Positions 3,606 through 40,754 of a DNA stretch of 64,000 bases are shown in pieces. The notes below the pieces were generated by a model, which was not told the DNA's origin, made no database searches, and saw only the letters and a program-made list of their open reading frames with translations. The first letter of the stretch is position 1; each line of letters begins with the position of its first letter. A program made the position numbers and the translations under genes. This DNA comes from Rebecca billardiae RCC1528 (Eukaryota > Protista > Haptophyta). The stretch is from assembly GCA_965240325.2 (NCBI GenBank), contig OZ251224.1, forward strand, positions 2,790,001 through 2,854,000, in the 5' to 3' direction.

Positions 3606-6600
3606 TCATGAGCGCGCACCCGCGCCGCTGGCTGTGCGCGCGCGCCGAAGCAGCGCGCCACCTGCGATGCGGAGCGCAACGATCGGCGCATCCTGCACGG
3701 CGAGGGTCGCGCAGAGCGAGACGCCCCACGAGAAGAGCATCGCCACCGTGCGCCGCTCGCCGAGGCCTGTGCCGAGCACTACCACGAGCACGCACAGCCC
3801 GGCGAAGCTGCCGAGTGCCGCCGCCCACACGAGCGCGAGCCGCATGTGGAGTGGGTGGCTTGGCTCTGGCTTGAGCTCGGATGTCGCCTCCTCAGAGTCA
3901 GGCCGGCGGCGCGCGTCGGCGGCCTTAGCGCGCGCGTACCACACACACAGCGCGTCGCGGTCCACGCGCGGCTGCCCGCCCGCCACGCGGTCCGCGCGGT
4001 CCGCGGCCGCGGCGGCGAGCGTGCGCAGCAGCGCGCGCAGCTCGTGCGCCGTCATCGGGTCTCGCAGCTCGATCGTGAGCAGCCGAAGCGCGCGCAGGCT
4101 GAGGCAGCCGTCGTGCTCTGACTCGAAGAGGCGGATGAGCGTGCGCAGCGCGTGCAGCTCAACGTCTCCCAGTCCGGGGATTGGCGACGAGCCGCGGTGG
4201 GAGGGTGCAGCGCGCGGCGGCGGAGAGACAGGTACGGCAGCGGCGGCCGTCGAGGTCGCGTCTGTGCCCGGCGCCGCGCGCATGCTGGCGAAGCGGCGCG
4301 CTGGCAGCTGGGGCTGGGCGGCCGTGGCGGCGCCGATGGCTTGGTCGGCGGCTGGCGTCGACGCGAGCCCGTCGCCCTCCGCGTGCTCTTCGCCGTCTCG
4401 TGACGGCGCAGGTGCGGCCGCCGTTGCGGGCAGGATCGCTTGATGGCTTTCCGCCTGTGGCGGCGGTACGCTCACCGTGCGCAGCGAGCGCTTGTCTGCG
4501 GCGGCGGGTGGCGCCGCGGCCGGCATGTGCGCATGCGGCAGCGCCGGAGACTCCGTGGTATCCGGCGGCTCGGGCGTGGGCGTGCCATGCGCGGCGCTAG
4601 GCTGCGTGGCGCCCACGCCCGCGCCCGCTGGCGCCGCGGCCGGGCTGGACTGCGCCGGCTCGGCGGCAGGCGGTTCAGAGTCGCCGACCGGGGCGGCGCG
4701 GCAGCGAGTAGCGGCCGGATTCGGCCCGTCCGGACTTCCGTGCCCAGGGTCGACGCGCGTGCGGCGCGGAGCGAGCGGCGCGCTGTCTGCGGCCTCGGGC
4801 CGAGGGCCAGCCGGCGCTGCCGCTGGCGCCGCCGCTGGCGCAGGGCACGGCGCGCCAGGCGCGCGGGATGTGTCCGCCTTTGCCGCCGCGTCGTCACGAG
4901 CGCCGCCGCGCGGCGAGCCGACGTCGGCGGCCGCGCGCGGCGCAGCTGGCGTCGGCTGCAGCCTCGCCTGCGACGCCGTCCGCGTGGGCCCGCAGAGTGA
5001 GCCGCGCCGGGACCCAGGGCACGAGCCGCGCCTCGCCCCAGGAATGAGCGCCTGGGCGGTGGACGGGTCAGGCTCGGGCGTCGAGCCCTCTGCTGGCGTC
5101 GGCTGCAGCCTCGCCTGCGACGCCGTCCGCGTGGGCCCGCAGAGTGAGCCGCGCCGGGACCCAGGGCACGAGCCGCGCCTCGCCCCAGGAATGAGCGCCT
5201 GGGCGGTGGACGGGTCAGGCTCGGGCGTCGAGCCCTCTGCTGGCGTCGGCTGCAGCCTCGCCTGCGACGCCGTCCGCGTGGGCCCGCAGAGTGAGCCGCG
5301 CCGGGACCCAGGGCACGAGCCGCGCCTCGCCCCAGGAATGAGCGCCTGGGCGGTGGACGGGTCAGGCTCGGGCGTCGAGCCCTCTGCTGGCGTCGGCTGC
5401 AGCCTCGCCTGCGACGCCGTCCGCGTGGGCCCGCAGAGTGAGCCGCGCCGGGACCCAGGGCACGAGCCGCGCCTCGCCCCAGGAATGAGCGCCTGGGCGG
5501 TGGACGGGTCAGGCTCGGGCGTCGAGCCGTGCGCGGCAGCGGGCAGGGGACGCTCCTGCTGGGTCTGGTCCGGCAGGTCCGGCTCATTCAGGCCGGCAGC
5601 GTGCGGCGTGGTGCGCGCGCGGAGGGCACATGTGCGCGCATCCTCGCCGCCCTCCCCGTCGGCGGCCATGACCGTCGCGCCGGCGGTGGTCGGGCGTGCC
5701 AAGGCGCGTGGCGGCGGCTCGGCCGCGGGCGCGGGCGCTGCCTGAACCAGCGCTGCCAGCACCGCCGCAGCCGACGTGCACGCGTCGGGCGTGGCGTCGG
5801 CCGGCGCGGTAGCACCTGCCATGTTCCACGCCGTGCGCGCGGGCAGCGTGAATGCCGGCGCCCTCCAGGGCGTCTCCTGGCGGCCGCGGGGCGCGGGTCT
5901 GGCTGAGGCCACCCCCGCGCGTGAGCGCGGCGGCTCGTGCGGCGGCGGCGCACGTGGCGGCGACGGCGGCGGTGACGGTGGCGGCGCGTCGCCCTCGGCG
6001 GTGTGCCTGCTGTCACTCGACAGCCCGCCGTCACTCAGCCGCGCAGGGCGCTTGAGCGCACGCTCGGGTGAGACAGCGCAGCTGTGCTCCGCGCTGGTGT
6101 CGTGCTCCGAGTCGCTGAGCCGCGGGTCGAGCCGCGGCGAGCTCGGCAAGAGCAGCGCGCGTGCGGCGCCCGCCGCGGCGCGCGCGCTCGCGCTCCCAGG
6201 CCGCACGCGCGCCGCCCGGCAGCATGCACTTCCGGGCCGATCATGCGCGCGGCCGACGTCGGCATTCTCACCGCCCGCGGCGGCGGAGCGGCGCAGAGGG
6301 TCGGCTGCATCGCTGCTGCGCGGCCGCGGGCGGCGCAGCGCGGCCGTGCCTGAGCCTTTCTCCGCCTCCTCCGCCTCCGCGTCCGCCGCGCGCCGCGCGC
6401 GCTCAAGCTGCGCTGAAGCCAGCCGGTCAGTAAGCGCACTGCGCGGCCGCTGGAGAGGCGCCACGATCGAGCCGCCGCTCAGCGCGACGCTCGCGCCCGC
6501 CGAGGATGGGCGGCTCGGCGGATGCGGGGCGCGCGACACGCTCGCGGGTCGCCGCTCCGCCGAGCCACCCTGCGCGCCGCCGCGGGCCGCGGTGGCGCCG

Positions 6601-9600
6601 TCGCTGTCAGCGAGCCCAGGCGAGACAGGCGCGGGCGGGCGCGCGCGCTGAGCGCGCGTGGGCAAGACCCGCCCCGCCCCGCCACCCAAGTCTGCAGCCG
6701 GCGGGCTCCGCGCCGAGCGCTCCAACCGCCCCGCCGCCGAGACCTCGCCGCCAGCCCACGACGGCTGCGCCGGCGGCGCGGCTGGAGGTGACATCGGGAG
6801 CGTGCAGCCGAGGTTGCCTGGTCGGCGCGAAGCCGCGCCGGCGCTCCCCGGAGCGTGCGCCTGTGCCTGGCGGGCCTCCGCCCAGCCGGACACGTCCGCC
6901 GGGGACACAAGGCCGACGGAGCGCGGCGCGCTGTCGTGTGCGGATGTAGAATATAGACTCTCCTCCACGGACGCCGCACCGCAGGTGCCGTGGCCGCCGC
7001 CGCCGCCGCCGCGCGCAACGTCCGCTGGCTGCCGGCTGCACGACTCGACCATCGACTCAACGATGGAGGACAGCCGGGCGGAGCGGACGCCGGACGCGAG
7101 CAGCAGCTGGCCGTCCAGCGCGGCGCGCAGCGCGCGGTACAGCCGCTGCGGCGGCGTGCATTTCTCGTGCGCGTGCGCGAGCGCCCACGCCGCGCGGCAG
7201 CCGTGCACGCCCGCCGTTCCGACCGCCAGCCCCAGCAGTGCAACCAGAGCGATCGCGCCCGGCGAAGGGTCCGGGCGCCCGCCGGTGGCGCGCGAATCCT
7301 CCTCGTACAGCGCGGCCTCCGCGGCCAGCTGCAGCGCCGCCGCCCAGAACACCGACTGCGCGAGCTCCGCGCGGCGGACGGTGCGCGCGAGAGGCGCAAA
7401 GAGCAGCAGCAGCAGCAGGTGCTCGTCCGCGCCGCGCTGCGCGATCGCGCGCGCGCGCGCGCGCCACTCAGTGCGCCACGCGGAGCGGGTGGTGTCCGCG
7501 CCATCCGGCTGAGCCGGGGTCGGCGCGGCCGCCACGGGCGCGGCCCGCGGCGCAACGCTCGGGCCCGTGTCCGCCACCGATGTGTCGCCGCCGCCATCCG
7601 CAGCCGAGCGGCAGCTTGCGGCGGCGGGCGGGGCGAGCAGGCCGTTGGCGCCGCGCCGCGCCTCGGCAGTGTCCGCCGGGGCGGAGGCGCTCTCGGCGGC
7701 CCCAGCGGCGGCGGCGGCGGCCTCGGTGGCGACGGCCGCGGCTACTCGCGCGTACGCCTGCTCCGCGCGCCGGCGCTGTCGCACGGCTTCGAGCGTGCTC
7801 GGCTCATCAGGGCCGGGCGGCGCGCGCAGCGGCGAGCGCGCCGCCGTGCGTGTCGCGTCGTCGGCATGGCCAGCGCCGCTGCTGCTGTTCAGCCGGCCGA
7901 GCACGCCCGCGCACGCACGGAGCGCGGCGGCGGAGGGGAAGGAAGACACAGGCAGCGCCAACGACCGGCGAGATGCAATCTCGGCCGCTCGAGATGCAAT
8001 CTCGGCCGCCGGCGCCACCCCGCTCGTCTTGAGCTCGGACGCGTGCCACCGCGCGTACTCCGTGCGCATGCGGCGGTCGGCGAGCAGCGCCAGCACCAGC
8101 GCTAGCGCGTGCGCGCCGACGAGCAGGTACACGAGCCTTGTGATCGTCTCGTTGAACGGCACCCGACCTCCGGGCTGCTCGAGCAGAGCTGACGCGCCGC
8201 TGCCGGCTGTGAACGGGCCGGGCGGCGTGGCGTCGGCGTCGAGGGCGGCGTCGGCGGCGGGATCGCGCGGGACGAGCCCCGCGAACGTGGTCAGGTGATC
8301 GCACGCGCAGTAGAGCGCGGCCGGGTCGCGGCCGGCCGGCGCGTCGACCGCGACGCAGCCGTCCGATCGCCACAGGCGCGCCGCCTCGTCGAGGAAGCGG
8401 CAGCCGACGGCGGTGGCGGCGGCGGCGGGTTGCACGCTCGCGCGGCCGAGGAGCGGAGGGAGCTGCAGCAGCACTGGCTCGGGCAGCGCGCGCACGGTGA
8501 GCGCCGCCGCGCCCGCACCCGCACCCGGCGCGTACAGCGAGGCGGAGATCACGGCCGTGGAGATCTCGCCGCCAGACTCGCTGGACGCGGCGCCAACGGC
8601 CGCCGCCAGCTCGGCCGGGTGGTCCGGATGGTCCGGATGGTCCGTCGCGTTGCGCAGCGCCATGTCAACGTCCACCTCGCGCGTCGCGATGGCGCTGATC
8701 ACCACGTCGACCGAGCCGTCGGGGCCGAGCGCGGCGGCGGGCTGCGCGAGCACCGCCGACGCGGGCACGCGCACGCCGCCGCCCGTGCGGCGCAGCTCGA
8801 CCCACTCGGTCCAATCGGCGGCGCCGCGCGCTTCAGCGTCGGCGGCGCTAGCCGGCGGCAGCGTGCCGGCGCGCACGCGCGCGGCGGCGACGCTCACCGC
8901 GACGCCCGCGAGCTGCACGGGCGGCTCACCCGGCACGGCGCCGACGAGCATTGCGCGCGCCAGCGTCGTCGCCAGCTCCAGCGTCGCGACGCCCACCGCC
9001 ACCGACTCGTCCGCGCTCACGCCGCGTGTCGCGTTGGCAAGCAGCGATCGGTCGGCCGCGCGGACGAGCGCCTCTGCGGTCGGGCCGTCGATGCCGAAGC
9101 CGGCGTCGAGCGCGGCGCGCGCGAGCGAGGCGGCCTGCGCGAGCGTCTCCGCCTGCGCCTCGCCGTCGTAGTCCAGCGACGCCCACGACTCCGCCACCGC
9201 GGCGAGCGCGGCCGCGTGCTGCGCGCGACCGTTGGTGCTCGGCGGCGCCAGATCCGACGCCGCGCGCACCACGGCCAGCAGCGCGCGCGCGGGCGCGGGC
9301 GCGGCGGCGTCGAGCTGCGCGATGGCGGTGACGAGAGTGAGCGCGGTGGACGCGTCGGAGCGCTCGAGCGCGTCCTGCGCGCGCGCCACCAGCGCCTCCA
9401 CCGCCGCCGCGTCGAGCTCGGCGCGCGGCGGCGGCAGCACGTCGACGGCCGCGCCCGTGCGCGCCTCGGCGCCATGCGCGTCCGCGACGCGCGCCGCGAC
9501 AACGAGCGCGCCCGCGGGCAGCAGCACGGCTCTGAGCGTCGGGCTGTCCACCGCGGGCGCGCCCAGCGGCACCGCGCGCCCGCCGCCCGCCTCGGCCGCC

Positions 9601-12600
9601 AGCCGCTCGAGCGGGTCGCCGCCGTACCCAGCTGGGTAATGTGAGTACTCGAACGCGTAGCTGAGCGGCAGGTCGTCTGCGCCGCCGTCGTCCGTCCAGC
9701 CGGCGGCGAGCAGGTCGACGGGCTCGGCGAGGCGGATGGTGGGGAGCGTGGCCGAGGACGCCGCCGCCGCCGCCGCGCGGGGCCACACCGCCAGCGTGCC
9801 GCCGTGCGGAGGGCGGTTCACGCGGACGGCAACCGTCGCCACGCCCGTCGGCGCCGCGCCCTGCGCGCCCGGCGCGCCCGCGCCTGCCGCGACACTCGAG
9901 TCCCCCGCGCGGCGCGTGACGCTGAGCTCGAAGAGATAGTGCGCGCCGGGGTGGAGCGCGCCGCTGCGGAAGGCGAGGACGGGCTGCGCGGCGCCCGTGC
10001 TCGTCGTGCCCACCGCGTCGCTCAGCTCGAGCGCCGACTGCACCCACAGCCCGCCGCCGCCGGGCGCGGGCTCGAGCGCGCGCCACGCGTAAGCATACGC
10101 GGCCGTGTCGAGCGGCGAGCGCGCGCCGATGGCGAGCCGCTCGGCGGGCAGCCGCCAGGTGGGGTTGACGACGCCGCCGCGCGGCAGCGGCTCGAGCGTG
10201 ACGGCGGGCGGCTCGCCGTGCGCCAGCACCTCGAGCCGCATGCTCGCGCTCGCCGCCAGCCCTGCGCCGGCCGCGGACGGCCGCACAGACACGGTCAGGG
10301 CGAGGGTGTATGTGCCACCGCCGAGCGAGGCCGGCGGCAGCGTGAGCACGGGACCGGCGCAGCAGCCGTCGTCGGCTCCGTCGGCGTCGGCGGCGCTCGT
10401 GAGCGCGGTGGCGGCGGCGGTGCTCGCGTTCGGCGGCAGCGGCAGCGCCACGCCGCTCGCGCCGTCGCGCAGCGCCCACGCGTACGACAGCGCGCCCGCA
10501 CCCTCGGCCGCGTTCGGGTCGAAACTTCCGGAAGCGTCCGCGACGATGGGCGCGGCGGGGCCGACGCGGAGGCTGGCGGCGGCGAGGCGCGCGACGGGCG
10601 GCTGCGGGGCGCGCACGCGGAGGGTGGCGCGCGCGCTCGACGCGGCGGCCGGATCGTCCGCCATCGCGGCCACCACCTCAAGAGTGTACGCGTGCGCAGG
10701 CGTGAGCGTGTGCGGTGGGAACGAAAGCGATGCGCCGCGCGCGTGCGCCCGGAGGTCGAGCGACGCGGCCGCCGCCTCCGCCGCGGCGAAGTCGGCGTCG
10801 GTCGCGGCGGCGGCGTCGAGGGGCGCCACCGCGACGACGCGCCAGCCGAATGTGACGCGGCCCGGCCGCCCTTCGCCCCAGCACGGCGCGAGCCGCTCGA
10901 TGCGCGCGCGCAGCGCGACACCTGCTGCGGCGCGCACGGCGCTCGCCGGTACTCCGTCGATGGCGACCGTCGGGCTTGGTGTGCGCGTGCGCCGCACCTC
11001 CGTCCACGCGAGCACGGAGGGCACGCCGAGGAAGGAGATGACGCGGAGCGCGACCACGTACCCACGCGTCGAGTCCGCGGCCGGCAGACCGTCTAGCCTT
11101 GCGCTCGACGCCGACGGCGGCAGCGCAAGCAGCTCGCGCCCAACTCGCTCCGCACCCGCGCCCGAAGGACCGAGGTCCAGGCCCCAGCGAAATGTGGGTG
11201 CGCCGGCGCCGCCGCGGCTTGACGCGAGGCCGTCGAGGGCGAGCGTCTCGTTGGCGCACGCCGAGAGGGCCGCGGGCGCGCGCAGCACGGCGACGGGCGT
11301 CGGGCACGGCGCGTCGCCGCACGGCGCGTCAGGATCGACACTGACCGCGGTCGCGTCGTTGCCGCCCGCGCTGCCGCCCGCGCACCCGCCTGTTGCGAAG
11401 CAGTCTGCGGCGCGGACCGCGCCCGCGCGCACGCCCACGCGCGCGCCCGGGCCAGCGCGCGTGCCCGCGCCAAGCCGCGCCTCGAAGGTCGAGGCGTCGC
11501 GCCAGCGGCAGCTCAGCGGCGGGTCGGACGGCGCCGCGTCGCCGGCGAGCAGCTCGAGCGTCTCGTCGTCGAGCACCGCGCCGCACTCGCCGAGGCCTTC
11601 GCCCATCCGCGCGCGGTCGGTCGGCTGCGCGTCAAAGTGGACGAGCAGCGACGCGCCGCTCTCCGGGTCGAAGCGAGCGCGCAAGAAGACCGGCGAGTAC
11701 GGCTCGTCGTCGATTGTGTAGTAGACCGCTCTCGACCCGCCCGCCTCGCGCGGCGCGAACTGCTGCCCGTTGAGCGCCACGCGCACCTGCACGGGGCCGC
11801 TGGCGCCGGCGGCGTGCAGCGCGTACGCGGAGCGCTGGAGCGCGCTGCCGCTCCCGTCGGTCGAGAGCGCGAGCGGTCGCTCCGCGACGGCGTCGCCAAA
11901 GGCGAAGCGCACGTAGCTGCTGCCGAGCAGCGTGCCCGCGCCCGCCACAGAGCAGACGACGGCTGTGCGCGGCGGCCCGCGCGCCGGGCTGATGCGGAGC
12001 ACGCTCACCAGAGTCTCGTTGTAGTACTCAAAGAACAAGGGCGATGAGGAGGAGGAGGAGGAGGAGGAGGAGGAGGAGGGGTCTGGTGAGCCGGTGCTGC
12101 CGTCGTCGGGGTCGGCGCTGTTGGCGGACGGCGTGGCGGGGGTTGTAGTGCGCTGCGCCACCACGCGCGGCGCGCCGCCGGCCTCGTCACCAGCCGCCGG
12201 CGCCGCCACGCGGCCGAGCGCAAGGGCTACCAGCCCCGCGCCTGCCCTCGAGGGCGGGGTGACGCAGCGCGCGCGGCTCGTGCCGTTGAGAGGGCGCAGC
12301 AGCGTGGCGGCTGAGACGCACGCCTCGCCGTACAGCGCGGGCGCGACGCAGCACAGCCAGGCGGCGGCGCTCCCCGCGCCATCGCTGCCCTCGCCCGTAT
12401 CGTCAGCCGAGCCCGAGGCGCCAACGCCGGCGTCGGCGTCGGCGGCGAGGCCCGCTGCGAGCTCGAAGCCGCGCCCCTCCAGGGTGACCACCGTGCCGCC
12501 GTCCAGTGGCCCGAGCGGCGGGCGCACCGCCGTCACGCCCACCTCGGCCGAGAAGTCGTACAGTCGCACGGCCGGCGGCCCGAACAGCGTGGGCACGCGC

Positions 12601-18600: not shown

Positions 18601-21600
18601 CTTGGCGGCGGACTCGGTGGCGGCGACGGCGGTGGGCCGGGGGGCGGCGACGGTGGCGGGCTCGGTGGCGGCGACGGCGGCGGGCTGGGCGGCGGGCTTG
18701 GCGGTGGGCTCGGTGGCGGCGACGGTGGTGGGCCCGGCGGTGGTGACGGCGGCGGGCTCGGCGGCGGGTTCGGCGGCGGCGACGGTGGCGGGCTCGGCGG
18801 CGGTGACGGCGGTGGGCTCGGCGGCGGCGATGGTGGCGGGCTTGGTGGTGGCCTTGGTGGCGGTGACGGCGGCGGGTTCGGGGGCGGCGACGGGGGCGGG
18901 CTTGGCGGTGGGCTGGGCGGCGGTGACGGCGGTGGGCTTGGCGGCGGGCTTGGTGGCGGTGATGGTGGCGGGCTGGGTGGCGGCGATGGCGGCGGGCTTG
19001 GCGGTGGGCGTGGTGGCGGGCTCGGTGGCGGCGATGGCGGTGGGCTCGGTGGCGGCGACGGCGGTGGAGATGGAGGTGGGCTCGGTGGCGGCCTCGGAGG
19101 TGGGCTTGGCGGCGGTGACGGTGGAGGGCTCGGTGGTGGGCTTGGCGGCGGGCTCGGCGGCGGACTTGGCGGCGGGCCTGGTGGTGGAGAGGGCGGAGGG
19201 CTCGGCGGCGGTGACGGCGGAGGCGACGGAGGAGGTGATGGCGGCGGCGATGGCGGGGGTGGCGATGGCGGAGGGCTCGGCGGCGGCGACGGCGGGGGGG
19301 AAGGCGGCGGGCTCGGAGGTGGTGGGCTTGGCGGTGGGCTCGGTGGCGGGGATGGTGGTGGCGACGGCGGTGGCGAGGGTGGCGGCGATGGCGGTGGTGA
19401 CGGCGGTGGGCTTGGTGGAGGGCTTGGCGGTGGCGACGGTGGAGGGCTCGGCGGAGGGCTTGGGGGAGGGCTTGGTGGCGGCGGCGAGGGCGGTGGACTC
19501 GGCGGCGGGCTGGGCGGCGGTGAAGGCGGCGGGCTTGGCGGTGGCGAGGGCGGCGGGCTCGGTGGCGGGCTTGGTGGCGGGCTGGGCGGTGGGGGAGAAG
19601 GCGGTGGCGAGGGCGGCGGGCTTGGCGGTGGCGAGGGCGGCGGGCTCGGTGGCGGGCTCGGTGGCGGGCTCGGCGGTGGGCTCGGCGGCGGGCTTGGCGG
19701 TGGCGGAGATGGTGGTGGGCTTGGTGGTGGGCTCGGCGGTGGGCTCGGTGGCGGGCTCGGCGGTGGGCTCGGGGGCGGGCTCGGCGGTGGCGACGGCGGT
19801 GGGCTTGGCGGTGGGCTAGGTGGCGGTGACGGCGGAGGCGAGGGCGGCGGAGATGGCGGCGGTGGGCTTGGTGGCGGCGAGGGCGGTGGGCTCGGTGGCG
19901 GCGAGGGCGGTGGCAATGGCGGTGGGCTCGGTGGCGGGCTCGGTGGAGGCGATGGCGGTGGCGATGGTGGCGGCGGGCTCGGCGGGGGCGAGGGTGGTGG
20001 CGACGGCGGTGGGCTCGGCGGCGGGCTCGGTGGCGGCGAAGGTGGTGGGCTCGGTGGCGGCGATGGCGGCGGGCTCGGCGGTGGGCTCGGCGGCGGGGAT
20101 GGCGGCGGGCTCGGTGGCGGGCTTGGTGGCGGCGGGGATGGCGGTGGGCTTGGCGGCGGCGATGGCGGCGGGGATGGCGGTGGGCTCGGCGGAGGACTTG
20201 GGGGGGGCGAGGGTGGTGGTGAGGGCGGCGGAGACGGCGGTGGCGGGCTCGGTGGCGGGCTCGGCGGCGGGCTCGGTGGCGGCGATGGCGGCGGCGATGG
20301 CGGCGGGCTCGGCGGTGGGCTCGGCGGTGGCGAGGGCGGCGGCGATGGCGGTGGGCTCGGCGGCGGGCTCGGAGGTGGCGACGGCGGCGGCGATGGAGGC
20401 GGCGGGCTCGGCGGCGGGCTTGGCGGAGGCGAGGGCGGCGGGCTCGGCGGCGGGCTTGGCGGGGGCGAGGGCGGTGGGCTCGGTGGGGGCGAAGGTGGCG
20501 GGCTCGGCGGCGGGCTCGGCGGCGGGCTCGGCGGCGGGCTCGGCGGCGGCGACGGTGGCGGCGGGGACGGCGGCGGGCTCGGCGGAGGGCTTGGTGGTGG
20601 CGACGGTGGGGGACTTGGTGGTGGCGATGGCGGAGGGCTCGGCGGAGGGCTTGGTGGCGGCGATGGCGGTGGGCTTGGTGGAGGCGAGGGCGGAGGCGAG
20701 GGCGGCGGGGAGGGCGGTGGTGGGCTCGGCGGCGGCGAGGGAGGCGGGCTCGGTGGTGGCGACGGTGGTGGCGACGGCGGCGGGCTCGGTGGCGGGCGTG
20801 GCGGCGGGCTCGGAGGGGGCGATGGCGGCGGCGGGCTCGGTGGTGGGCTGGGCGGTGGCGATGGCGGTGGGCTTGGCGGCGGGCTTGGTGGCGGCGAGGG
20901 TGGCGGGCTCGGCGGCGGCGATGGTGGCGGGCTGGGCGGCGGGCTGGGCGGCGGACTGGGCGGCGGGCTGGGCGGTGGGCTGGGTGGTGGTGGGGATGGC
21001 GGCGGGCTGGGCGGCGGCGACGGTGGAGGCGAGGGCGGCGGGGACGGCGGCGGCGGGCTGGGTGGTGGACTCGGCGGCGGGCTCGGTGGTGGCGACGGTG
21101 GGGGCGATGGTGGCGGGCTCGGCGGCGGGCTTGGGGGTGGCGACGGCGGCGGCGATGGTGGCGGGCTCGGCGGCGGGCTCGGTGGCGGCGATGGTGGTGG
21201 CGACGGTGGCGGGCTGGGCGGCGGGCTCGGTGGCGGCGACGGCGGGGGCGATGGCGGCGGCGGGCTCGGTGGTGGGCTGGGCGGTGGCGATGGCGGTGGG
21301 CTTGGCGGCGGGCTTGGTGGCGGCGAGGGTGGCGGGCTCGGCGGCGGCGATGGTGGCGGGCTGGGCGGCGGGCTGGGCGGCGGGCTGGGCGGCGGGCTGG
21401 GCGGTGGGCTGGGTGGTGGTGGGGATGGCGGCGGGCTGGGCGGCGGCGACGGTGGAGGCGAGGGCGGCGGGGACGGCGGCGGCGGGCTGGGTGGTGGACT
21501 CGGCGGCGGGCTCGGTGGTGGCGACGGTGGGGGCGATGGTGGCGGGCTCGGCGGCGGGCTTGGGGGTGGCAACGGCGGCGGCGACGGTGGCGGGCTCGGC

Positions 21601-24600
21601 GGCGGGCTCGGTGGCGGCGATGGTGGTGGTGACGGTGGCGGGCTGGGCGGTGGGCTCGGTGGCGGCGACGGCGGGGGCGATGGCGGCGGCGGGCTCGGCG
21701 GTGGGCTGGGGGGTGGCGACGGCGGTGGGCTCGGCGGCGGGCTTGGCGGCGGCGAAGGTGGTGGGCTTGGCGGCGGCGATGGTGGCGGGCTCGGCGGTGG
21801 GCTGGGCGGCGGACTGGGCGGCGGGCTGGGCGGTGGGCTCGGTGGTGGTGGACTCGGCGGCGGGCTGGGCGGTGGCGACGGCGGAGGCGATGGCGGTGGG
21901 CTTGGGGGCGGCGATGGCGGGGGGCTCGGAGGAGGGCTCGGTGGTGGCGACGGCGGCGGGCTCGGCGGGGGCGAGGGTGGCGGTGAGGGCGGCGGAGATG
22001 GCGGCGGGCTCGGCGGGGGCGATGGTGGCGGCGATGGTGGCGGAGAGGGCGGTGGTGGGCTCGGCGGCGGCGAGGGCGGCGGACTCGGCGGCGGCGATGG
22101 CGGCGGCGATGGCGGCGGGCTCGGCGGTGGGCTCGGCGGTGGCGAGGGCGGCGGCGAGGGCGGCGGGCTGGGCGGCGGGCTCGGCGGTGGCGACGGCGGC
22201 GGCGATGGAGGCGGCGGGCTCGGCGGTGGGCTCGGTGGAGGCGAGGGCGGCGGGCTCGGCGGCGGGCTTGGCGGAGGCGAGGGTGGTGGGCTCGGTGGTG
22301 GCGACGGCGGCGGGCTCGGCGGCGGGCTCGGCGGCGGGCTCGGTGGCGGCGATGGCGGTGGGCTTGGTGGGGGCGAGGGTGGCGGCGAGGGCGGTGGAGA
22401 GGGCGGTGGTGGGCTTGGCGGAGGCGAGGGCGGCGGACTCGGCGGCGGCGATGGCGGCGGCGATGGCGGCGGGCTCGGCGGTGGGCCAGGCGGTGGCGAG
22501 GGCGGCGGCGAGGGCGGCGGGCTCGGCGGCGGGCTCGGTGGCGGTGATGGCGGCGGTGATGGTGGTGGCGGGCTCGGCGGTGGGCTTGGTGGCGGCGAAG
22601 GTGGTGGGCTTGGCGGCGGCGATGGTGGCGGGCTCGGCGGTGGGCTGGGCGGCGGGCTGGGCGGCGGGCTGGGCGGCGGGCTCGGTGGTGGGCGCGGCGG
22701 CGGGCTCGGTGGCGGGCTTGGTGGTGGCGGGGATGGCGGTGGGCTCGGGGGCGGCGACGGCGGTGGCGACGGGGGTGGGCTTGGCGGCGGGCTCGGCGGA
22801 GGGCTCGGCGGTGGCGAGGGCGGCGGCGATGGCGGCAGGCTCGGCGGCGGGCTCGGTGGCGGTGATGGCGGGGGTGATGGCGGCGGCGGGCTCGGTGGAG
22901 GGCTTGGCGGCGGGCTCGGTGGCGGTGACGGCGGCGGGTACGGCGGTGGGCTTGGTGGTGGGCTCGGTGGCGGCGAGGGCGGCGGCGACGGCGGTGGGCT
23001 CGGCGGCGGGCTGGGAGGTGGCGAAGGCGGCGGCGATGGCGGCGGCGGGCTGGGCGGTGGGCTAGGCGGTGGCGAGGGCGGCGGGCTCGGCGGCGGGCTC
23101 GGCGGCGGGCTTGGCGGTGGGCTCGGCGGCGGTGACGGCGGCGGGCTCGGCGGCGGCGGGGATGGCGGCGGGCTCGGCGGCGGGGACGGCGGCGGCGACG
23201 GCGGTGGGCTCGGGGGCGGCGATGGCGGAGGACTCGGAGGAGGGCTCGGTGGTGGCGATGGGGGAGGGCTGGGAGGCGGGGATGGTGGTGGGCTCGGAGG
23301 TGGGCTCGGGGGCGGCGGGCTCGGCGGCGGGCTTGGTGGCGGGCTCGGGGGCGGCGAGGGCGGCGGGCTTGGCGGCGGGCTCGGCGGCGGGCTCGGCGGC
23401 GGGCTCGGCGGCGGTGACGGCGGCGGGCTCGGCGGCGGCGGGGATGGCGGCGGGCTCGGCGGCGGGGACGGCGGCGGCGACGGCGGTGGGCTCGGGGGCG
23501 GCGATGGCGGAGGACTCGGAGGAGGGCTCGGTGGTGGCGATGGGGGAGGGCTGGGAGGCGGGGATGGTGGTGGGCTCGGAGGTGGGCTCGGAGGCGGCGG
23601 GCTCGGCGGCGGGCTTGGTGGCGGGCTGGGCGGCGGCGATGGCGGTGGAGAGGGAGGCGGGCTCGGCGGCGGGCTTGGCGGCGGGCTCGGCGGCGGGCTC
23701 GGGGGAGGCGGGCTGGGCGGCGGGCTGGGCGGTGGGCTGGGCGGCGGTGACGGCGGTGGGCTCGGCGGCGGCGGGCTCGGCGGCGGGCTCGGCGGAGGCG
23801 ATGGTGGCGGAGACGGTGGTGGCGAGGGCGGCGGCGATGGTGGCGGCGAGGGCGGCGGGCTTGGAGGCGGCGGGCTCGGTGGCGGCGATGGCGGTGGCGA
23901 TGGTGGCGGGCTTGGCGGCGGGCTCGGAGGTGGGCTTGGCGGAGGCGAGGGCGGCGGGCTCGGCGGCGGGCTCGGCGGCGGGCTCGGCGGTGGTGACGGG
24001 GGCGGCGATGGAGGCGGGCGTGGTGGGGGCGCTGATGGCGGCGGCGATGGTGGCGGGCTTGGTGGCGGGCTTGGTGGTGGCGAGGGCGGCGGGCTGGGCG
24101 GTGGCGACGGCGGTGGGCTGGGCGGCGGCGATGGTGGTGGCGAGGGCGGCGGCGAGGGAGGCGGGCTCGGTGGCGGAGGGCTCGGGGGCGGCGAGGGCGG
24201 CGGGCCTGGCGGCGGCGAGGGCGGTGGGCTCGGCGGCGGCGAGGGCGGCGGGCCTGGCGGCGGCGAGGGCGGTGGGCTCGGCGGCGGCGAAGGCGGCGGG
24301 CCTGGCGGCGGCGAGGGCGGAGGGCTCGGCGGCGGCGAGGGCGGCGGCGAGGGCGGTGGAAGAGGTGTGGGCGGCGTCAGCCCGACAGAGGGAAGGCTAT
24401 CCCCCATCGTCGCAGCGTTCGAGCCGCGCTGCACGGAGTCACCCGTGCCCAGCTGCCCGTTGGCCGGGTCGCCAAAGCTGCGCAGCGCGCGCGCGCCGCG
24501 CGGCCACGTGCATGCGAAGGTCAGGAATGTGCTCGCAGGCGCAGGTGGCGCGCTTGCACGTGGTGCGCGAGCCAAGCAGTGCGCGCCTGGCGCATGCCCC

Positions 24601-26724
24601 CCACTCGCCTCGCCGTGCGGGAGCTGCCAGCCGCGGCCGCAGCGGCCGGCGCGCTGCGCGGCCGCGCGCACCGCGCCGCAACGCACACACGCACGCGCGG
24701 GCGCGCGCGGGCTCACACCAGCGGATGCCGTTGTCGTCTGTGACTGCGCATGTGAATATGTTGCCCGTACTCACGAAAAGCGTGGTCCGGCCGGTCCCGA
24801 GGTTGACCGGCTTGAGCGCGTCGCCCATCTCGCCTGCGTTGTCGCCACGGGCTGACGAGTCGCCGGAGCCGATCTGCCCCGAGGATGCATCCCCCCAGCT
24901 GCTCCAAGTCACCGAGCACCGGAGCGCCCCGCGGCCGCCCGCACGCATGGCGGCAAGGGCGGGAGCGTGCACGCGCGCGCGGCGCGTCCACGGAGCGCGC
25001 GCCGACCGGCCGGGTTTGCGAGAGGCGAGGGGGGGCGAGGGGGTGTCTGCGGTGAGCTGCACGGCGGGTGGATCGGCTCGGGCGGCGTGCTGGCCCGGGC
25101 CGGGGCCGCGTGGCGCGATGTGGCGAGGCAGTGCGCGCCGCACGCACCACTTGAGCACGCCGCCCGTTGCGACCGCACAGCCGTGCGTGGACCCGAGGCT
25201 GAGCGCGGTGGGTGCGAGCCCTGAGCCGAGCGTGAAGCTCGACACCGTCGACGGGTCGTTCTCAAGCGAGCCGGCGCCGTTGCCCAGCTCCCCGTTTGCG
25301 CCATCGCCCCAGCACTTGATGCCGCCGGCGGTCAGCCGTGCGCACGAGTGCAGCAGAGCAACTGCCACCTCATCCGCCGAGCCTGCCGGTAGCGCCGCGG
25401 GCAGGTTGTCACCCATCGTGTTGGACGAGTCGCCGTAGGTGTCCTCGTTGGCCGTGCCGAGCTGACCTCCGCCGTTCTCGCCCCAGCTGCGCGCGGGGCC
25501 AGGCGCGTGGGGCACGCGCGGCGCGAGCGCGTGAGGGCCGAGGCACGCACGCGCGGGCCAGCCGGCAACGCGCACACACAGGCCGCCAGCCGCCCTTGCC
25601 GGCCAAATCGTTGCCATGTGCATCCGTGCGACGGATGCGCGCGCCCGGATGCCGGAGGCGGTTCGTGCGACGTGCGACGTGCGCTGCCCAATGCACCGCC
25701 ACACCCACGCACTCGGCCCGAGGCGCCCGGCGCGCACGGCCCGCGCGACAGCCGCCGCGCACTGCGCCGCGCGCGCACGTACGCAACACGCTCGCTCGCG
25801 CGCCGCACGTACCACTTGACCGAGCCGTCTGAAAAGAGCACGCAGCCGTGCGTGCCCAGGTGCACGTCGATGGAGCTGACGGTCAGGCCGCTGCCGAAGG
25901 ACAGGTGGCTCCCGGGCGTCTGCAGGCTGTCCCCATTCTCGTACCCCAGCTGGCCTTTGTTGCCCCTGCCCCAGCACTGCACGCCGACCACGGATGAGAT
26001 CGTTGTGAGCGCGCACGTATGTGAGAGTCCGCAGCGCACGGTGTGCGGCGTGGCTGAGCCGCCGAGGCTCACCGCCGGCAGCGTGTTGCCCATCGCACGG
26101 CCGCTGCCATCTCCGGCGCTCGTGGTATCGCCCGTCCCGAGCTGCCCGTCGTCGTTCCGCCCCCAGCTGCGGCGGGCGGTGGGCGTCACGCCATGCAATC
26201 CCGCACGGGCGCGGGGCGCGTGTGAGGGCGTCGTTTGGGCAACATGCGCGCCGGCGTCGCGCGCGGCCGCTGGTGCACGACGCGCACCATCGGATCGTTG
26301 CGTCCGAGAGCACCGCGCACGAGTGTGAACCGCCTGCCGAGAGGTCGGTGATCGTGGTGCTGGTGGGCATCGTGAGGAACGGGAGGCTGTCGCCGAGCTC
26401 GTTGGGATTGTCGCCGATGGCGGCGGTGTTGTCGTAGCCCAGCTGGCCGTTGTCGTTGCGCCCAAAGCTGCTCGTCGCCGCGGGTGTCCCCGCGCGGCCG
26501 GCGCGTGAGCGCAGAGCGCGTGAGCGAGCGGGGCGAGCAGAGGCGCCGCGCGCGCGCGGCGGCGCGGCGCACCACTTCGCGAGGCCAGTGTCGTAGAGGA
26601 CGCAGGTGTGCTGCGTGCCACTCGATATGCGCGAGACGCCACCCGCGCTACCCACGCGCAGCAGCGGCCCCGGATGTGGCGCCGCCGTCGCGACGAGCGC
26701 GAGGAGGCCTACCCCAAGGGACAT
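3606..26724 (-). CDS. Giant polycystin-1/REJ-like surface receptor: signal peptide, 7 RCC1-like repeats, (SPPP)n stalk, IPT/TIG, REJ-like region, GPS, about 5 TM segments; ~7,358 aa
   Basis: Exons 26724-26573, 26467-26288, 26166-25813, 25486-25148, 24898-24719, 24477-3606 joined by five GT-AG introns; total 22,077 nt, in frame. N-terminus MSLGVGLLALVATAA. RCC1 motifs HxC...C[WF]GxNxxGQLG. IPT motifs VRPPLGPLDGGTVVTLEGRGF and VRVALNGQQF. REJ-like DASGSFDP, VNRPPHGG, GWTD..DLPLSYAF. GPS CRFLDEAARLWRSDGC...CACDHLTTF at ~8281-8405, followed by hydrophobic helices. Extra introns in the low-complexity 3' part cannot be excluded. Confidence 0.85.
4945..5528 (-). repeat. Four near-identical 147-bp (49-aa) tandem repeats in the predicted cytoplasmic region of the giant gene
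   Basis: Units start at 4945, 5092, 5239 and 5386; they encode GSTPEPDPSTAQALIPGARRGSCPGSRRGSLCGPTRTASQARLQPTPAE. Confidence 0.95.
13820..24360 (-). repeat. Coding minisatellite of 12-bp (SPPP) units, about 10.5 kb, with occasional SPPPP units and higher-order blocks
   Basis: Continuous open frame in the ORF track. Higher-order periods of 456 bp (14905/15361/15817) and 216 bp (16309/16525/16741) are visible. Confidence 0.97.
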
Positions 26725-26896
26725 CTGTTGGTGCGAGTACAACCTGGTAGTGCAAGCCGTACCCACGCGCGCGCATCACCTCGGCGAAGGAACTAGATAG
26801 ATAGGCAATCAAGGAACCGCGCCGCGGCAAGTGAAGACTGACCAGCAGGTGTTACCCGCAGCCTATTCGTGGTCGGTCAGCATGAGTAATACCGCA

Positions 26897-27175
26897 GAGT
26901 ATGCAAGGGGAATCTCAGCGGCTCGATGTAATTAAGGCAAGGCGATGTGGAATGTGAGTACTTTATGTAATATGTACTGTAACCAAGTGTGCACGTTAAA
27001 TCATAGTTAACTGTAAAGCGCCGATGAGTATGCAAGGAATCTCAGCGGGCCGAAGTGAGGCAAGTACTGTTTTGTGGCGGTCTCTTTGTGCAGTGTTGGA
27101 TGGCGTCAATCACGCCTTAACCAAGTGTGCACGTTAAAACATAGTAAACGGTAAGGCGTGATTAACGCCATCCAA
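26897..27175. repeat. Two degenerate ~130-bp direct repeats plus a 24-bp inverted repeat upstream of the giant gene
   Basis: GAGTATGCAAGG..AATCTCAGCGG and AACCAAGTGTGCACGTTAAA each occur twice. TTGGATGGCGTCAATCACGCCTTA (from 27096) pairs with TAAGGCGTGATTAACGCCATCCAA (to 27175) with 1 mismatch. Confidence 0.75.
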
Positions 27176-31860: not shown

Positions 31861-31966
31861 GCCGCGGTCGTGAACAGTCGTGACCCCTCACAGGACAGGT
31901 GGGGGGCCGGACGCCTGCCGTTCAGAAGTAAAAACGACAACCTCTCCGCCCTCCGGTCGCGTCATC

Positions 31967-35988: not shown

Positions 35989-36256
35989 CGCACCAAACCC
36001 ACACAATCGATCTCGACTCTCGAGCGCCGAGATTCTCAGGATCGTCAAAACACTCAAACGGACGGACGCGCGCCGGTCGCCAGCTTTTCTCCTGGTCGTC
36101 ATCACTTACCTTACCCGGGCCCGTCCGCGGCTCCGCGCGATACGGCCGGCCGGCACCATCGCCTGCACGCCCGGCAGCAGCAGCGCCGCCAGCCGCGAGG
36201 GCGAGAGCCTGCCAAACACGAGCCGCACGTCGACGAACTTCTGGAGCGTGTCGACC

Positions 36257-40484: not shown

Positions 40485-40754
40485 GGGCGGTACTCGACAA
40501 TGCAGCGCGCGGCGCTGCAGGGAGTGCATGGGATTGTCCTATTTGCAAATACAGCAGAAGACCATCAGCAGTCCCCGCGGTTGACCGCACCGCGCCTCGA
40601 CCGATGGCGGCGGGATTGGCGGCGGCATCCCCTTGACGTCAACGCCGGCTGGCGGTGTGCGGGCGACTCGTCGTCGCGTGAGAGCCGAGTGTGCGCGTAG
40701 CGCGTCAGCTCCGCTGCGCAAGAGAGCCAGCTCGCTCGTGTGAACTCGCAGGCG

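What the first reader, a model, noticed from the sequence alone, without database searches (positions are those of the whole stretch)
3606..26724. A ~7,400-aa polycystin-1-like receptor carrying an RCC1 propeller on a micron-scale extensin stalk
Seen: one gene joins a signal peptide, 7 RCC1-like repeats, ~3,500 residues of SPPP, IPT and REJ-like regions, an intact GPS motif (HL|T at ~8289-8297) and about 5 TM helices. I see no PLAT domain and no channel domain. Established: REJ-GPS-TM is the polycystin-1 architecture; GPS motifs autocleave at HL|T; SPn repeats are hydroxylated and glycosylated into polyproline-II rods in plants and green algae (~0.31 nm per residue). Inference: the ectodomain could be a cleavable filament about 1 micrometre long with a binding head, acting as a tethered adhesion or mechanosensing hair or scale component. 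I do not know of a described protein with this full combination and size.
Basis: partly seen in the sequence, partly recalled or inferred. Interest (0 to 1): 0.88.

Follow-up and report, generated by a model that had tools for sequence, protein, structure and literature searches.

The report
Giant stalked half-polycystin-1 surface protein
One intact 22-kb gene of a very GC-rich alga (probably a pavlovophyte haptophyte) encodes a 7,358-residue membrane protein with an RCC1 propeller on about 3,500 residues of Ser-Pro-Pro-Pro, set on a base like the front half of polycystin-1; this suggests a micrometre-long, cleavable surface hair, but no expression or long-read evidence could be obtained.

Summary
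On the minus strand, six exons (26724 to 3606) splice into a stop-free 7,358-aa protein. Its parts, in order:
- a signal-peptide-like start;
- a 7-blade RCC1-like propeller;
- 3,535 residues of (SPPP)n, then about 250 irregular Pro-rich residues;
- three IPT/TIG-like domains;
- REJ (Pfam E 2e-20);
- a GAIN domain with an intact HL|T site at 8289-8297;
- five TM helices.

There is no PLAT and no channel half.

The stalk is under protein-level selection. Pro codons vary only at the third position, Ser uses both codon families, and only 31 of 3,535 residues are not S or P.

The nearest relatives (33-40% identity) are TIG-REJ-GPS-5TM-EF-hand proteins of Pavlovales haptophytes, not green algae. A relative's 5-TM model matches TM1-5 of human polycystin-1 (Z 16.5). 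The window's copy has lost the family's cytoplasmic IQ-like motif and its EF-hand calcium ligands.

My best reading is a single-molecule glycosylated hair of about 1.1 µm held by a GAIN "fuse". It parallels Chlamydomonas MST3/Mstax but has a PKD1-type anchor.

Untested: transcription, array length and hydroxylation. No RNA run was listed and the one run laid was uninformative.

First readers of this scan flagged at least ten similar genes elsewhere in this genome; I did not check them.

The parts
26573..26724 (-). Exon 1: ATG, hydrophobic signal-peptide-like start (MSLGVGLLALVATAA), and the strands that close blade 7 of the propeller
   Evidence: RCC1_2 16 bits, below cut-off; in-frame stop just upstream
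26288..26467 (-). Exon 2: RCC1 blade 1
   Evidence: Pfam RCC1 E 4.9e-7; splice sites read
25813..26166 (-). Exon 3: RCC1 blades 2-3
   Evidence: Pfam RCC1 E 1.8e-8, RCC1_2 24 bits
25148..25486 (-). Exon 4: RCC1 blades 4-5
   Evidence: Pfam RCC1 E 6.2e-7
24719..24898 (-). Exon 5: RCC1 blade 6
   Evidence: blade motif WGDASSGQIGSGD...C; only weak Pfam hits
3606..24477 (-). Exon 6: one 20.9-kb exon holding the first half of blade 7, the stalk, the whole ectodomain base, the TM region and the stop codon
   Evidence: single ORF; 0 stops in 3,387 non-stalk codons against 15-52 in the other frames
13770..24374 (-). (SPPP)n stalk, 3,535 residues. The distal half carries an SPPPP unit mostly every 53 residues; the proximal half is pure SPPP.
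   Evidence: 107 DNA spellings of SPPP; 90% of 151-mers are unique
13017..13769 (-). Irregular Pro-rich linker with about four copies of a 63-residue (189-bp) unit
11667..13016 (-). Three IPT/TIG-like domains
   Evidence: Pfam TIG only 13 bits, but E 1e-34 to the TIG region of D. lutheri P0131, which has Pfam TIG E 4e-22
9330..10742 (-). REJ domain (Pfam envelope)
   Evidence: PF02010 E 2.4e-20, 73 bits, profile positions 38-450 of 452
8271..9410 (-). GAIN domain: a helical subdomain followed by a beta subdomain that ends in the GPS
   Evidence: AF2 model m2cefdd95a8d5; Foldseek top hits are aGPCR GAIN domains
8289..8297 (-). GPS cleavage triad H-L|T (spliced residues 5796-5798)
   Evidence: invariant in 23 family sequences
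8079..8135 (-). TM1
   Evidence: hydropathy 2.48; aligned with the family TM1
7305..7370 (-). TM2 (family motif RAELxQxFW...)
7197..7262 (-). TM3
4173..7196 (-). About 1,000-residue Ala/Pro/Arg/Ser/Gly-rich linker, cytoplasmic by inferred topology. It includes four 100%-identical in-frame 147-bp repeats at 4945-5528.
   Evidence: the relatives also have a variable linker here
3927..4172 (-). Degenerate EF-hand pair. Loop 1 reads E-S-E-H-D-G-C-L-S-L-R-A, with Ala at position 12.
   Evidence: aligned to Pfam-positive EF-hands of relatives; no Pfam EF-hand hit in the window protein
3765..3833 (-). TM4
3672..3743 (-). TM5, followed by a 21-residue tail and the stop codon

Best explanation
This is a real, intact nuclear gene of a GC-rich alga, most likely a pavlovophyte haptophyte. 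It encodes a giant multi-pass surface glycoprotein.

From the membrane outwards, the protein has:
- five TM helices of the polycystin-1 TM1-5 type;
- a GAIN domain whose HL|T site can self-cleave, leaving the outer part held only by a buried beta-strand;
- REJ and three IPT domains;
- a 3,535-residue (SPPP)n chain. If it is hydroxylated and O-glycosylated as a polyproline-II rod, it reaches about 1.1 µm;
- a 7-blade RCC1-like propeller as the binding head at the tip.

It is a divergent member of a family with the base TIG-REJ-GAIN-5TM plus a cytoplasmic IQ-like motif and an EF-hand pair. The family's N-terminal parts are variable.

I read it as a single-molecule surface or flagellar hair. Its length is set by the repeat number, and its attachment is a force-sensitive GAIN joint that allows shedding or release under load. 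In this copy the cytoplasmic Ca2+/calmodulin-type elements are degenerate, so anchoring and presenting the head are more likely than signalling.

Shown here: the gene structure, the domains, the GAIN fold, selection on the stalk, and family membership. Shown only on a relative: the PC1-like TM fold. Inferred: the signal peptide, TM topology, cleavage, hydroxylation and glycosylation, rod geometry, location, ligand binding and force dependence.
For: - Gene model: canonical phase-2 introns at blade junctions and a stop-free 7,358-aa product. Blade 7 starts in the same exon as the stalk, and the stalk runs into IPT-REJ-GAIN-TM in one ORF.
- Coding signal: 0 stops against 15-52 in the other frames, and GC3 well above GC2 in the folded ectodomain and the TM-bearing blocks.
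- Selection on the stalk: all 2,652 Pro codons are CCN, with third bases G 1569, A 765, C 224 and T 94. Ser is coded by AGY 491 times and by TCN 361 times. Only 31 residues are not S or P. The antisense frame would read GGG followed by L, D or E in turn, which is not conserved.
- Domains.
- GAIN fold. HL|T and the Cys residues are invariant across the family.
- Family: 130 relatives at E <= 1e-3. The named ones are from Diacronema lutheri and Pavlovales sp. CCMP2436 and have TIG-REJ-GPS-EF-hand. The post-GPS region is collinear.
- 5-TM fold: a relative's model matches PC1 residues 3063-3610 at Z 16.5.
- Stalks in relatives: P0001's contig is open in a Pro-rich frame from its first base to the called start, at least 280 aa. 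P0004 has a run of about 115 aa.
- Rod length: 429 residues gave a mean 146 nm measured, 133 nm in theory, in MST3 (PMC11015965).
- Topology: five TM helices with the N-terminus outside would put the IQ-like and EF-hand loops in the cytoplasm (inference).
Against: - There is no transcript, protein or long-read evidence. No RNA run was listed. The single run X1 gave only short contigs upstream of the gene.
- Array length is taken from one assembly, and local exact duplications occur (over 500 bp at a 216-bp offset).
- ORF length by itself means little at 80% GC.
- The roughly 1,000-residue linker has a weak codon signal and could hide introns.
- Prolyl hydroxylation and arabinosylation are established in green algae and plants, not shown in haptophytes here.
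- The GPS scores below Pfam's cut-off and lacks the first conserved Trp.
- The PC1-like TM match was obtained on relative P0003 with a model of mean pLDDT 64, and Foldseek did not find it.
- No database relative shows a comparable stalk or an RCC1 head.
Confidence: 0.55

Rival explanations
1. Gene-model or assembly artefact. The repeat is inflated or mis-joined, or head, stalk and base are not made as one protein because of separate transcripts or splicing that removes the stalk.
For: No read or RNA support could be obtained. At 80% GC, long ORFs occur in several frames; one sense-strand off-frame and one antisense frame of the stalk also have 0 stops. Exact local duplications lie inside the array. 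The 15-billion-protein collection holds the neighbouring amidohydrolase of this organism. The 50%-identity representative library built from it returned nothing above 40% identity for this gene's REJ-GPS-TM1 part.
Against: Codon-position-specific variation shows that the stalk is translated in the SPPP frame. 90% of 151-mers in the array are unique, so it is not a collapsed or copy-pasted satellite. Blade 7 and the stalk share an exon, and the propeller needs exon 1 and exon 6 together to close. A relative from an independent sample also has a Pro-rich frame directly upstream of its base. First readers flagged at least ten similar loci in this genome; I did not check them.
Confidence: 0.13
2. 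A true mechanosensory or adhesion receptor that signals like polycystin-1 or adhesion GPCRs. Load on the stalk removes the N-terminal fragment, and the exposed tethered peptide and 5-TM bundle trigger a Ca2+-linked response.
For: GAIN with an invariant HL|T. PC1-type TM1-5. The family base carries an IQ-like motif (AAxxIQRxxRGxxxRK in most of the 11 aligned relatives) and Pfam-positive EF-hand pairs.
Against: In the window's copy the IQ-like motif is gone. EF loop 1 lacks the position-12 Glu and loop 2 carries an insertion, and Pfam finds no EF-hand. The post-cleavage segment (family consensus VPTSAEEL..VNTFS) is diverged. There is no channel half and no 7TM.
Confidence: 0.17
3. Mainly a secreted or shed structural glycofibril for the cell covering, a scale-associated or mucilage fibre, or a free fibril like TLP-4. 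The membrane base would serve only for delivery and release through GAIN cleavage.
For: The repeat is a perfect tetrapeptide [S]-P-x-x. This is the pattern deduced for the free-standing TLP-4 glycofibril, which rises 12.4 A per 4 residues and whose gene is unknown (PMC11725842). The signalling motifs are degenerate. GAIN allows non-covalent release.
Against: A folded propeller head and the IPT-REJ modules are conserved and open. That is more than a delivery device needs. TLP-4's modified residue was modelled as 3,4-dihydroxyproline, with the remaining two residues undetermined, so identity cannot be claimed.
Confidence: 0.12
4. A decaying paralogue of the family that is no longer functional.
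For: Loss of the IQ-like and EF-hand features. Four 100%-identical 147-bp repeats and a greatly expanded low-complexity linker. A GPS below the Pfam cut-off.
Against: 22 kb of intact reading frame with spliced head exons. Strong purifying selection across the stalk. An intact HL|T and Cys framework.
Confidence: 0.03

Closest known systems
Chlamydomonas reinhardtii MST3 / Mstax, the axial protein of the mastigoneme (PMC11015965; bioRxiv 10.1101/2024.12.24.630281)
   Same: It is a giant protein (about 8,000 aa) with its N-terminus at the distal tip. It has sugar- or ligand-binding domains near the tip and a Hyp-rich extended chain hundreds of nm long that acts as a length ruler. A polycystin-family TM domain anchors it, and it has a long cytoplasmic part.
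   Different: The MST3 anchor is a PKD2-like channel domain completed by SIP, with no REJ or GAIN. Its stem consists of 34 complex MHR units wrapped by MST1, not bare SPPP. Its head domains are lectins, not RCC1. It is from a green alga, not a haptophyte-like lineage. No sequence homology was found here.
Polycystin-1 family (PKD1, PKD1L, PKDREJ, sea-urchin suREJ)
   Same: REJ domain, GAIN/GPS with HL|T, and TM1-5 of the same fold in a family member (8z6b_A, Z 16.5).
   Different: There is no PLAT in the TM1-TM2 loop; the relatives have an IQ-like motif there. There is no TM6-11 channel-like half, and there are no PKD, LRR or C-type lectin ectodomain modules. The relatives have an EF-hand pair between TM3 and TM4. 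The stalk has no counterpart.
Pavlovales TIG-REJ-GPS-5TM-EF-hand proteins (D. lutheri KAG8459354.1 and KAG8462819.1; Pavlovales sp. CCMP2436 KAJ1635852.1; all uncharacterised)
   Same: They are collinear from the IPT domains to the last TM, at 33-40% identity over the base.
   Different: As annotated, they have no RCC1 head and at most about 115 Pro-rich residues. They keep the IQ-like motif and functional-looking EF-hands, which the window protein has lost.
Extensins, algal HRGPs and Chlamydomonas sexual agglutinins (own knowledge: Ferris et al. 2005)
   Same: Ser-Pro(3-4) repeats; a globular head on a fibrous Hyp-rich shaft displayed on a flagellar surface.
   Different: The window's stalk has no Tyr cross-linking motifs (one Tyr in 3,535 residues). 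It is roughly five times longer than the agglutinin shafts, by my recollection. It is an integral multi-pass membrane protein with a GAIN joint.
TLP-4 glycofibril (PMC11725842)
   Same: A single linear chain of tetrapeptide repeats of the [S/T]P-x-x type, with a 12.4 A rise per repeat. That equals 4 x 0.31 nm, as expected for (SPPP)n.
   Different: The TLP-4 gene and its source organism are unknown. It is a free fibril with no partner domains seen. The link is a geometric analogy only.
Adhesion GPCRs
   Same: A GAIN domain with autoproteolytic HL|T follows a long modular ectodomain. The best structural matches of the window's GAIN model are aGPCR GAIN domains.
   Different: Five TM helices of the PC1 type, not a class-B 7TM. 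No 7tm_2 hit.

Membership tests
Polycystin-1 (PKD1/PKDREJ) family | REJ domain | tested here: met
   PF02010 E 2.4e-20, 73 bits against a cut-off of 25, covering profile positions 38-450 of 452
Polycystin-1 (PKD1/PKDREJ) family | GAIN domain ending in a GPS with HL|T | tested here: met
   AF2 model pLDDT 80. Foldseek hits: BAI3 4dlo E 3.5e-10, BAI2 8oek, latrophilin 4dlq, CELSR1 8vy2. HL|T is invariant in the family. Pfam GPS is 20.7 bits, just under the 22.5 cut-off.
Polycystin-1 (PKD1/PKDREJ) family | PLAT/LH2 domain in the first cytoplasmic loop | tested here: not met
   No PLAT hit in the window protein, in other frames or ORFs, or in seven relatives. In most aligned relatives that loop holds an IQ-like motif instead.
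Polycystin-1 (PKD1/PKDREJ) family | TM1-5 bundle of the PC1 fold | tested here: inconclusive
   Met for relative P0003 (8z6b_A residues 3063-3610, Z 16.5, rmsd 2.9 A, 195 residues). However, that model has mean pLDDT 64 and Foldseek missed the match. The window protein was only aligned to it, not modelled.
Polycystin-1 (PKD1/PKDREJ) family | C-terminal six-TM channel-like domain (PKD_channel), giving 11 TM in all | tested here: not met
   Only five TM helices, and the stop comes 21 residues after TM5. No PKD_channel hit. Nothing in the downstream ORFs.
Adhesion GPCR | Class-B 7TM after the GAIN domain | tested here: not met
   Five TM helices; no 7tm_2 hit
RCC1-like beta-propeller | Seven RCC1 blades forming a closed propeller | tested here: met
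   Pfam RCC1/RCC1_2 pass on exons 2-4. Seven C|[WF]G-delimited units, the last closed by the N-terminal strands. Closure itself was not modelled.
Extensin / hydroxyproline-rich glycoprotein | Ser-Pro(3-5) repeats | tested here: met
   808 SPPP + 35 SPPPP of 879 units
Extensin / hydroxyproline-rich glycoprotein | Prolyl 4-hydroxylation with Hyp-O-arabinosylation and Ser-O-galactosylation | not testable with these tools
   Needs chemistry. Neither the enzymes nor the modification were examined. No P4H or glycosyltransferase was found among the window's neighbours.
Extensin / hydroxyproline-rich glycoprotein | Tyr-based cross-linking motifs (YXY, VYK) | tested here: not met
   One Tyr in 3,535 stalk residues
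MST3/Mstax-type mastigoneme axis | PKD2-like TM domain lacking S1, completed by SIP | tested here: not met
   No PKD_channel hit; the TM fold matches PC1 TM1-5 instead
MST3/Mstax-type mastigoneme axis | MHR units Hyp11-(X2Hyp)n-Hyp12 that bind an MST1 sheath | tested here: not met
   The stalk is a plain SPPP/SPPPP repeat. MHR pattern taken.
Pavlovales TIG-REJ-GPS-5TM-EF-hand family (unnamed) | Collinear TIG, REJ, GAIN/GPS, TM1, TM2-3 and TM4-5 | tested here: met
Pavlovales TIG-REJ-GPS-5TM-EF-hand family (unnamed) | Cytoplasmic IQ-like motif and a Ca2+-binding EF-hand pair | tested here: not met
   The window has no IQ-like motif. Its EF loop has Ala at position 12, and Pfam finds no EF-hand.

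The most novel reading that the evidence does not exclude
Pavlovophyte-like algae carry an expanded, modular family of 'half-polycystin-1' anchors (REJ-GAIN-TM1-5). Each would present a different binding head (RCC1, LRR, FG-GAP and others) at the tip of a genetically encoded Ser-Pro3 ruler 0.7-2.5 µm long. On this reading each fine surface or flagellar hair is one polypeptide joined to the cell by a GAIN joint. Together with Chlamydomonas MST3, which uses a PKD2-type anchor, this would mean that tethering glycosylated filaments is an ancient, general job of polycystin-family proteins.
Probability: 0.3. Interest if true: 0.85.

Novelty: new variant of a known kind. Interest (0 to 1): 0.65.

Why it matters
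What polycystin-1 senses, and why it has a GAIN joint, is a long-standing open question. This gene is a natural protein in which the REJ-GAIN-TM1-5 module stands alone, without the channel half, and is loaded with a micrometre-long rod carrying a head. That design makes a role in bearing force or releasing under force directly testable in a microbe.

It also extends the 2024 discovery that a Chlamydomonas flagellar hair is built on one giant Hyp-rich protein with a polycystin-type anchor. Here the same design appears in a distant lineage with the other polycystin type.

Two smaller points follow. The gene is a candidate class for the orphan tetrapeptide glycofibrils seen by cryo-EM in pond water. 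And in one relative, P0001, the short-read contig ends inside the Pro-rich stalk, so protein databases built on such assemblies can under-report this architecture.

Tried and rejected
- Word-indexed homologue searches found nothing, both with the 1,671-aa IPT-REJ-GPS piece and with the whole ORF restricted to residues 3900-5560. Low-complexity words probably swamped the candidate lists. The exhaustive HMMER search worked instead.
- A PDB sequence search with the ectodomain base gave 0 hits. With a relative's C-terminal part it gave only calmodulin-type EF-hands.
- Foldseek on the 5-TM model gave only EF-hand hits. The index-free VIA search found PC1.
- I looked for PLAT or a channel domain in other minus-strand ORFs inside and downstream of the gene. 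There was none.
- Reads: one run of unknown type (X1, 10% of sampled words) and no RNA run were listed. Laying X1 on 24380-27300 gave only short contigs on 26759-27300 and fragments of 30-42 nt in the gene. That is neither support nor refutation.
- Organism: the neighbouring amidohydrolase matches only an unnamed Logan contig (ERR14847151) at 100%. The next best hits are 66-68% and unnamed. The species is therefore not named. It is not the published D. lutheri assembly.
- I rejected the green-alga assumption.
- I rejected the antisense Gly-rich reading of the array.
- Three literature searches, for REJ/GAIN proteins in haptophytes and for Pavlovales hairs, returned nothing relevant; a fourth gave one classification paper that held nothing on hairs.
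- I could not model the spliced RCC1 head or the window's own TM region.

Full report
**Observation**

The window is 71% GC. A block of 78-83% GC runs from about 4 kb to 26 kb, between flanks of 61-64%. On the minus strand, one ORF runs from 24716 to the stop at 3606, 7,036 codons. Upstream of it, RCC1-like blades appear in alternating frames.

Reading the DNA gives five GT..CAG introns of 105, 121, 326, 249 and 241 nt. Each cuts a Cys codon as TG|C at the ...C|[WF]G junction between blades. This confirms an earlier first-reader note (s1-339047). Three of the intron lengths are not multiples of three, so the frame is kept only by splicing. The spliced product is 7,358 aa without an internal stop. 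The ATG at 26724 follows an in-frame stop and opens with a hydrophobic, signal-peptide-like segment. I judged that by eye; no predictor was available.

**Domains**

- Pfam RCC1/RCC1_2 pass their cut-offs on exons 2-4. Splitting at C|[WF]G gives six full blades. A seventh has its first half at the start of exon 6 and its closing strands in exon 1.
- REJ is unambiguous (E 2.4e-20).
- GPS scores 20.7 bits, just below the 22.5 cut-off, because the first conserved Trp is Leu.
- TIG is only 13 bits in Pfam. That region nevertheless aligns at E 1e-34 with the TIG region of Diacronema lutheri KAG8459354.1, which is Pfam-positive.
- An AlphaFold2 model of ORF residues 5070-5570, built on a 23-sequence family alignment, has mean pLDDT 80. 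Its best PDB matches are the GAIN domains of BAI3, BAI2, latrophilin-1, CELSR1, GPR126 and GPR110, at E 3.5e-10 to 7e-7. A whole GAIN domain is therefore present, not only a GPS motif.
- In the family alignment, the four Cys, Gly, H-L-T and Phe of the GPS are invariant.

**The stalk**

ORF residues 115-3649 consist of 879 X-Pro(n) units, of which 808 are SPPP and 35 are SPPPP. The SPPPP units lie only in the distal half, mostly 53 residues apart. TRF sees the array as periods of 12, 24 and 36.

The array is not a DNA satellite that happens to be open:
- All 2,652 Pro codons are CCN, and their third base is G 1569, A 765, C 224, T 94.
- Ser is encoded by two unconnected codon families, AGY 491 times and TCN 361 times.
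- Only 31 of 3,535 residues are not Ser or Pro.
- The equally open antisense frame would read GGG followed by Leu, Asp or Glu in turn, which is not conserved.

This is the signature of long-term purifying selection on the SPPP reading. SPPP has 107 different DNA spellings and 90% of 151-mers in the array are unique. A long-read assembly could therefore resolve it. Local exact duplications do exist (over 500 bp at a 216-bp offset), so the unit number may vary between individuals.

A 250-residue irregular Pro-rich segment, with about four 63-residue units, links the array to the first IPT domain.

**Behind the GPS**

Hydropathy and alignment to relatives define five TM helices. The 3,387 non-stalk codons have no stop, while the other five frames have 15-52. 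GC3 far exceeds GC2 in the folded ectodomain and in the blocks that hold TM2-3 and the EF-hand-like region with TM4-5. The signal is weak in the roughly 1,000-residue Ala/Pro/Arg/Ser/Gly-rich linker between TM3 and the EF-hand-like region. That linker holds four 100%-identical 147-bp in-frame repeats. Relatives have a shorter, equally variable linker there. I cannot exclude a hidden intron in it.

With the N-terminus outside, five TM helices would place both long loops in the cytoplasm. This topology is inferred.

**Relatives and lineage**

An exhaustive HMMER search of 1.8 billion representatives with the REJ-GAIN-TM1 part found 130 proteins at E <= 1e-3, and 35 at E <= 1e-10. The best is 40% identical. 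The named ones are from Diacronema lutheri and Pavlovales sp. CCMP2436, both haptophytes. Most of the seven I scanned show TIG, REJ, GPS and an EF-hand pair, in that order, with the same five TM helices.

The window's 71% GC fits the 73% reported for D. lutheri (PMC8379373). The species itself is not in named databases.

The family alignment also shows an IQ-like motif (AAxxIQRxxRGxxxRK) in the TM1-TM2 loop of most of the 11 aligned relatives. The window protein has lost this motif. Its first EF loop reads E-S-E-H-D-G-C-L-S-L-R-A, with Ala where the bidentate Glu should be. Its second loop carries an insertion, and Pfam finds no EF-hand.

**Is it polycystin-1-like?**

PLAT and the channel-like six-TM half are absent from the window protein, from its other frames and downstream ORFs, and from the relatives.

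A model of the compact C-terminal part of relative P0003 (mean pLDDT 64, TM helices 75-95) gave only EF-hand matches with Foldseek. The index-free VIA search of 48,161 chains put human polycystin-1 first: 8z6b_A, residues 3063-3610 (which I take to span TM1-TM5), Z 16.5, 195 residues, rmsd 2.9 A. The next rows, at Z 12.7 and below, are EF-hand proteins. The tool's own caveat puts chance matches for helical bundles at up to about Z 13.

I therefore treat homology of the 5-TM bundle to PC1 TM1-5 as likely for the family. It extends to the window protein by alignment only. The protein is best described as a 'half-polycystin-1': REJ-GAIN-TM1-5 without PLAT and without the pore-forming half.

**Stalks elsewhere**

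As annotated, only one relative (P0004) has a Pro-rich run, of about 115 residues, and no relative of 3,900-12,300 aa was found.

This is at least partly an assembly artefact. The 9.8-kb Logan contig that encodes the best relative (P0001) is open in a Pro-rich frame from its first base to the called start codon, at least 280 residues. Its stalk is therefore cut off by the contig end.

First readers of this scan flagged at least ten other loci in this same genome with the same base. They describe stalks of 2,200-7,900 residues under RCC1, LRR, FG-GAP/RTX or other heads. I have not checked these notes. If they hold, this gene is one member of a modular family.

**Mechanism**

Shown:
- a secretory-type start;
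- a propeller head and a selected SPPP chain;
- IPT-REJ-GAIN with an intact cleavage triad;
- five TM helices.

Inferred:
- The chain is hydroxylated and O-glycosylated into a polyproline-II rod. At 0.31 nm per residue, the value borne out by the free N-terminal PPII filament of MST3 (429 residues, 133 nm in theory, mean 146 nm measured; PMC11015965), 3,535 residues give about 1.1 µm.
- A four-residue repeat on a three-residue-per-turn helix steps Ser by one third of a turn per unit. The 12.4-A repeat equals the rise per tetrapeptide of the orphan TLP-4 glycofibril (PMC11725842).
- After GAIN autoproteolysis, the whole 5,797-residue outer fragment would hang on one buried beta-strand. That makes a joint which can release under load.

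Because the family's cytoplasmic IQ-like and EF-hand elements are degenerate in this copy, I favour anchoring and presenting a binding head (adhesion, capture, hair) over Ca2+-linked signalling here. Signalling remains plausible for the relatives. From my own knowledge, pavlovophyte flagella and cell bodies carry fine non-tubular hairs and knob scales. That makes a hair role attractive, but nothing here tests location.

**Comparison and novelty**

The nearest described system in design is Chlamydomonas MST3/Mstax. It is one giant protein with its N-terminus at the tip, binding domains, a Hyp-rich ruler hundreds of nm long, a polycystin-family TM anchor and a long cytoplasmic part. The anchor there is PKD2-like, the stem is a complex repeat sheathed by MST1, and I found no sequence relationship.

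I found no paper on REJ-GAIN proteins with such stalks in haptophytes. I rate this a new variant of known kinds: polycystin-1-type REJ-GAIN receptors, and HRGP hairs on polycystin anchors.

**Limits**

No transcript, protein or long-read evidence could be obtained. The spliced head and the window's own TM region were not modelled. Modification of the stalk is an extrapolation across lineages.

Noticed in passing
window 4945-5528 (-): Four tandem 147-bp units, 100% identical and in frame (49 aa each, EGSTPEPDPSTAQALIPGARRGSCPGSRRGSLCGPTRTASQARLQPTPA). They lie inside the putative cytoplasmic linker of the giant gene and indicate a very recent expansion.
   Followed up: partly
window 13770-24374 (-): The stalk has two regimes. 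The distal part (ORF residues 179-1818) carries an SPPPP unit mostly every 53 residues. The proximal part is pure SPPP with local higher-order duplications, for example an exact repeat of over 500 bp at a 216-bp offset near 16183.
   Followed up: partly
alignment A2 (relatives P0003, P0131, P0005, P0009, P0011, P0016, P0023 and others): Most of the 11 aligned relatives have an IQ-like motif (AAxxIQRxxRGxxxRK) in the TM1-TM2 cytoplasmic loop, which by my recollection is where polycystin-1 has its PLAT domain. They also have an EF-hand pair between TM3 and TM4. This could be a built-in Ca2+/calmodulin-type switch.
   Followed up: partly
L001:1-841 (Logan SRR30664515 contig of relative P0001): The frame of the called gene stays open and Pro-rich from the first base of the contig to the called start codon. 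In this short-read assembly the stalk of this family member is cut off and the protein is mis-started.
   Followed up: yes
window 40740-48680 (+): Four tandem copies of a 462-aa ORF at exactly 2,184-bp spacing, with no Pfam hit. First-reader note s1-339048 concerns the same gene.
   Followed up: no
window 58348-62341 (+): Three tandem ORFs (390, 390 and 305 aa) at 1,538-bp spacing, with no Pfam hit. First-reader note s1-338896 concerns the same repeat.
   Followed up: no
window 20-964 (+): The 3' part of an amidohydrolase gene (Amidohydro_1, E 4e-35), convergent with the giant gene. Its full 486-aa product is found at 100% identity on a 2.9-kb Logan contig of run ERR14847151. This is the only external trace of the organism that I found. 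Its next relatives are 66-68% identical and unnamed, with a patchy spread (Lacrimia, Prasinococcus, Tetraselmis at 49-56%).
   Followed up: partly
window 31880-32944 (+) and 35618-37183 (+): A SET-domain ORF and a D-2-hydroxyacid dehydrogenase ORF. They are ordinary neighbours. Nothing in the window looks like a prolyl hydroxylase or a glycosyltransferase.
   Followed up: no
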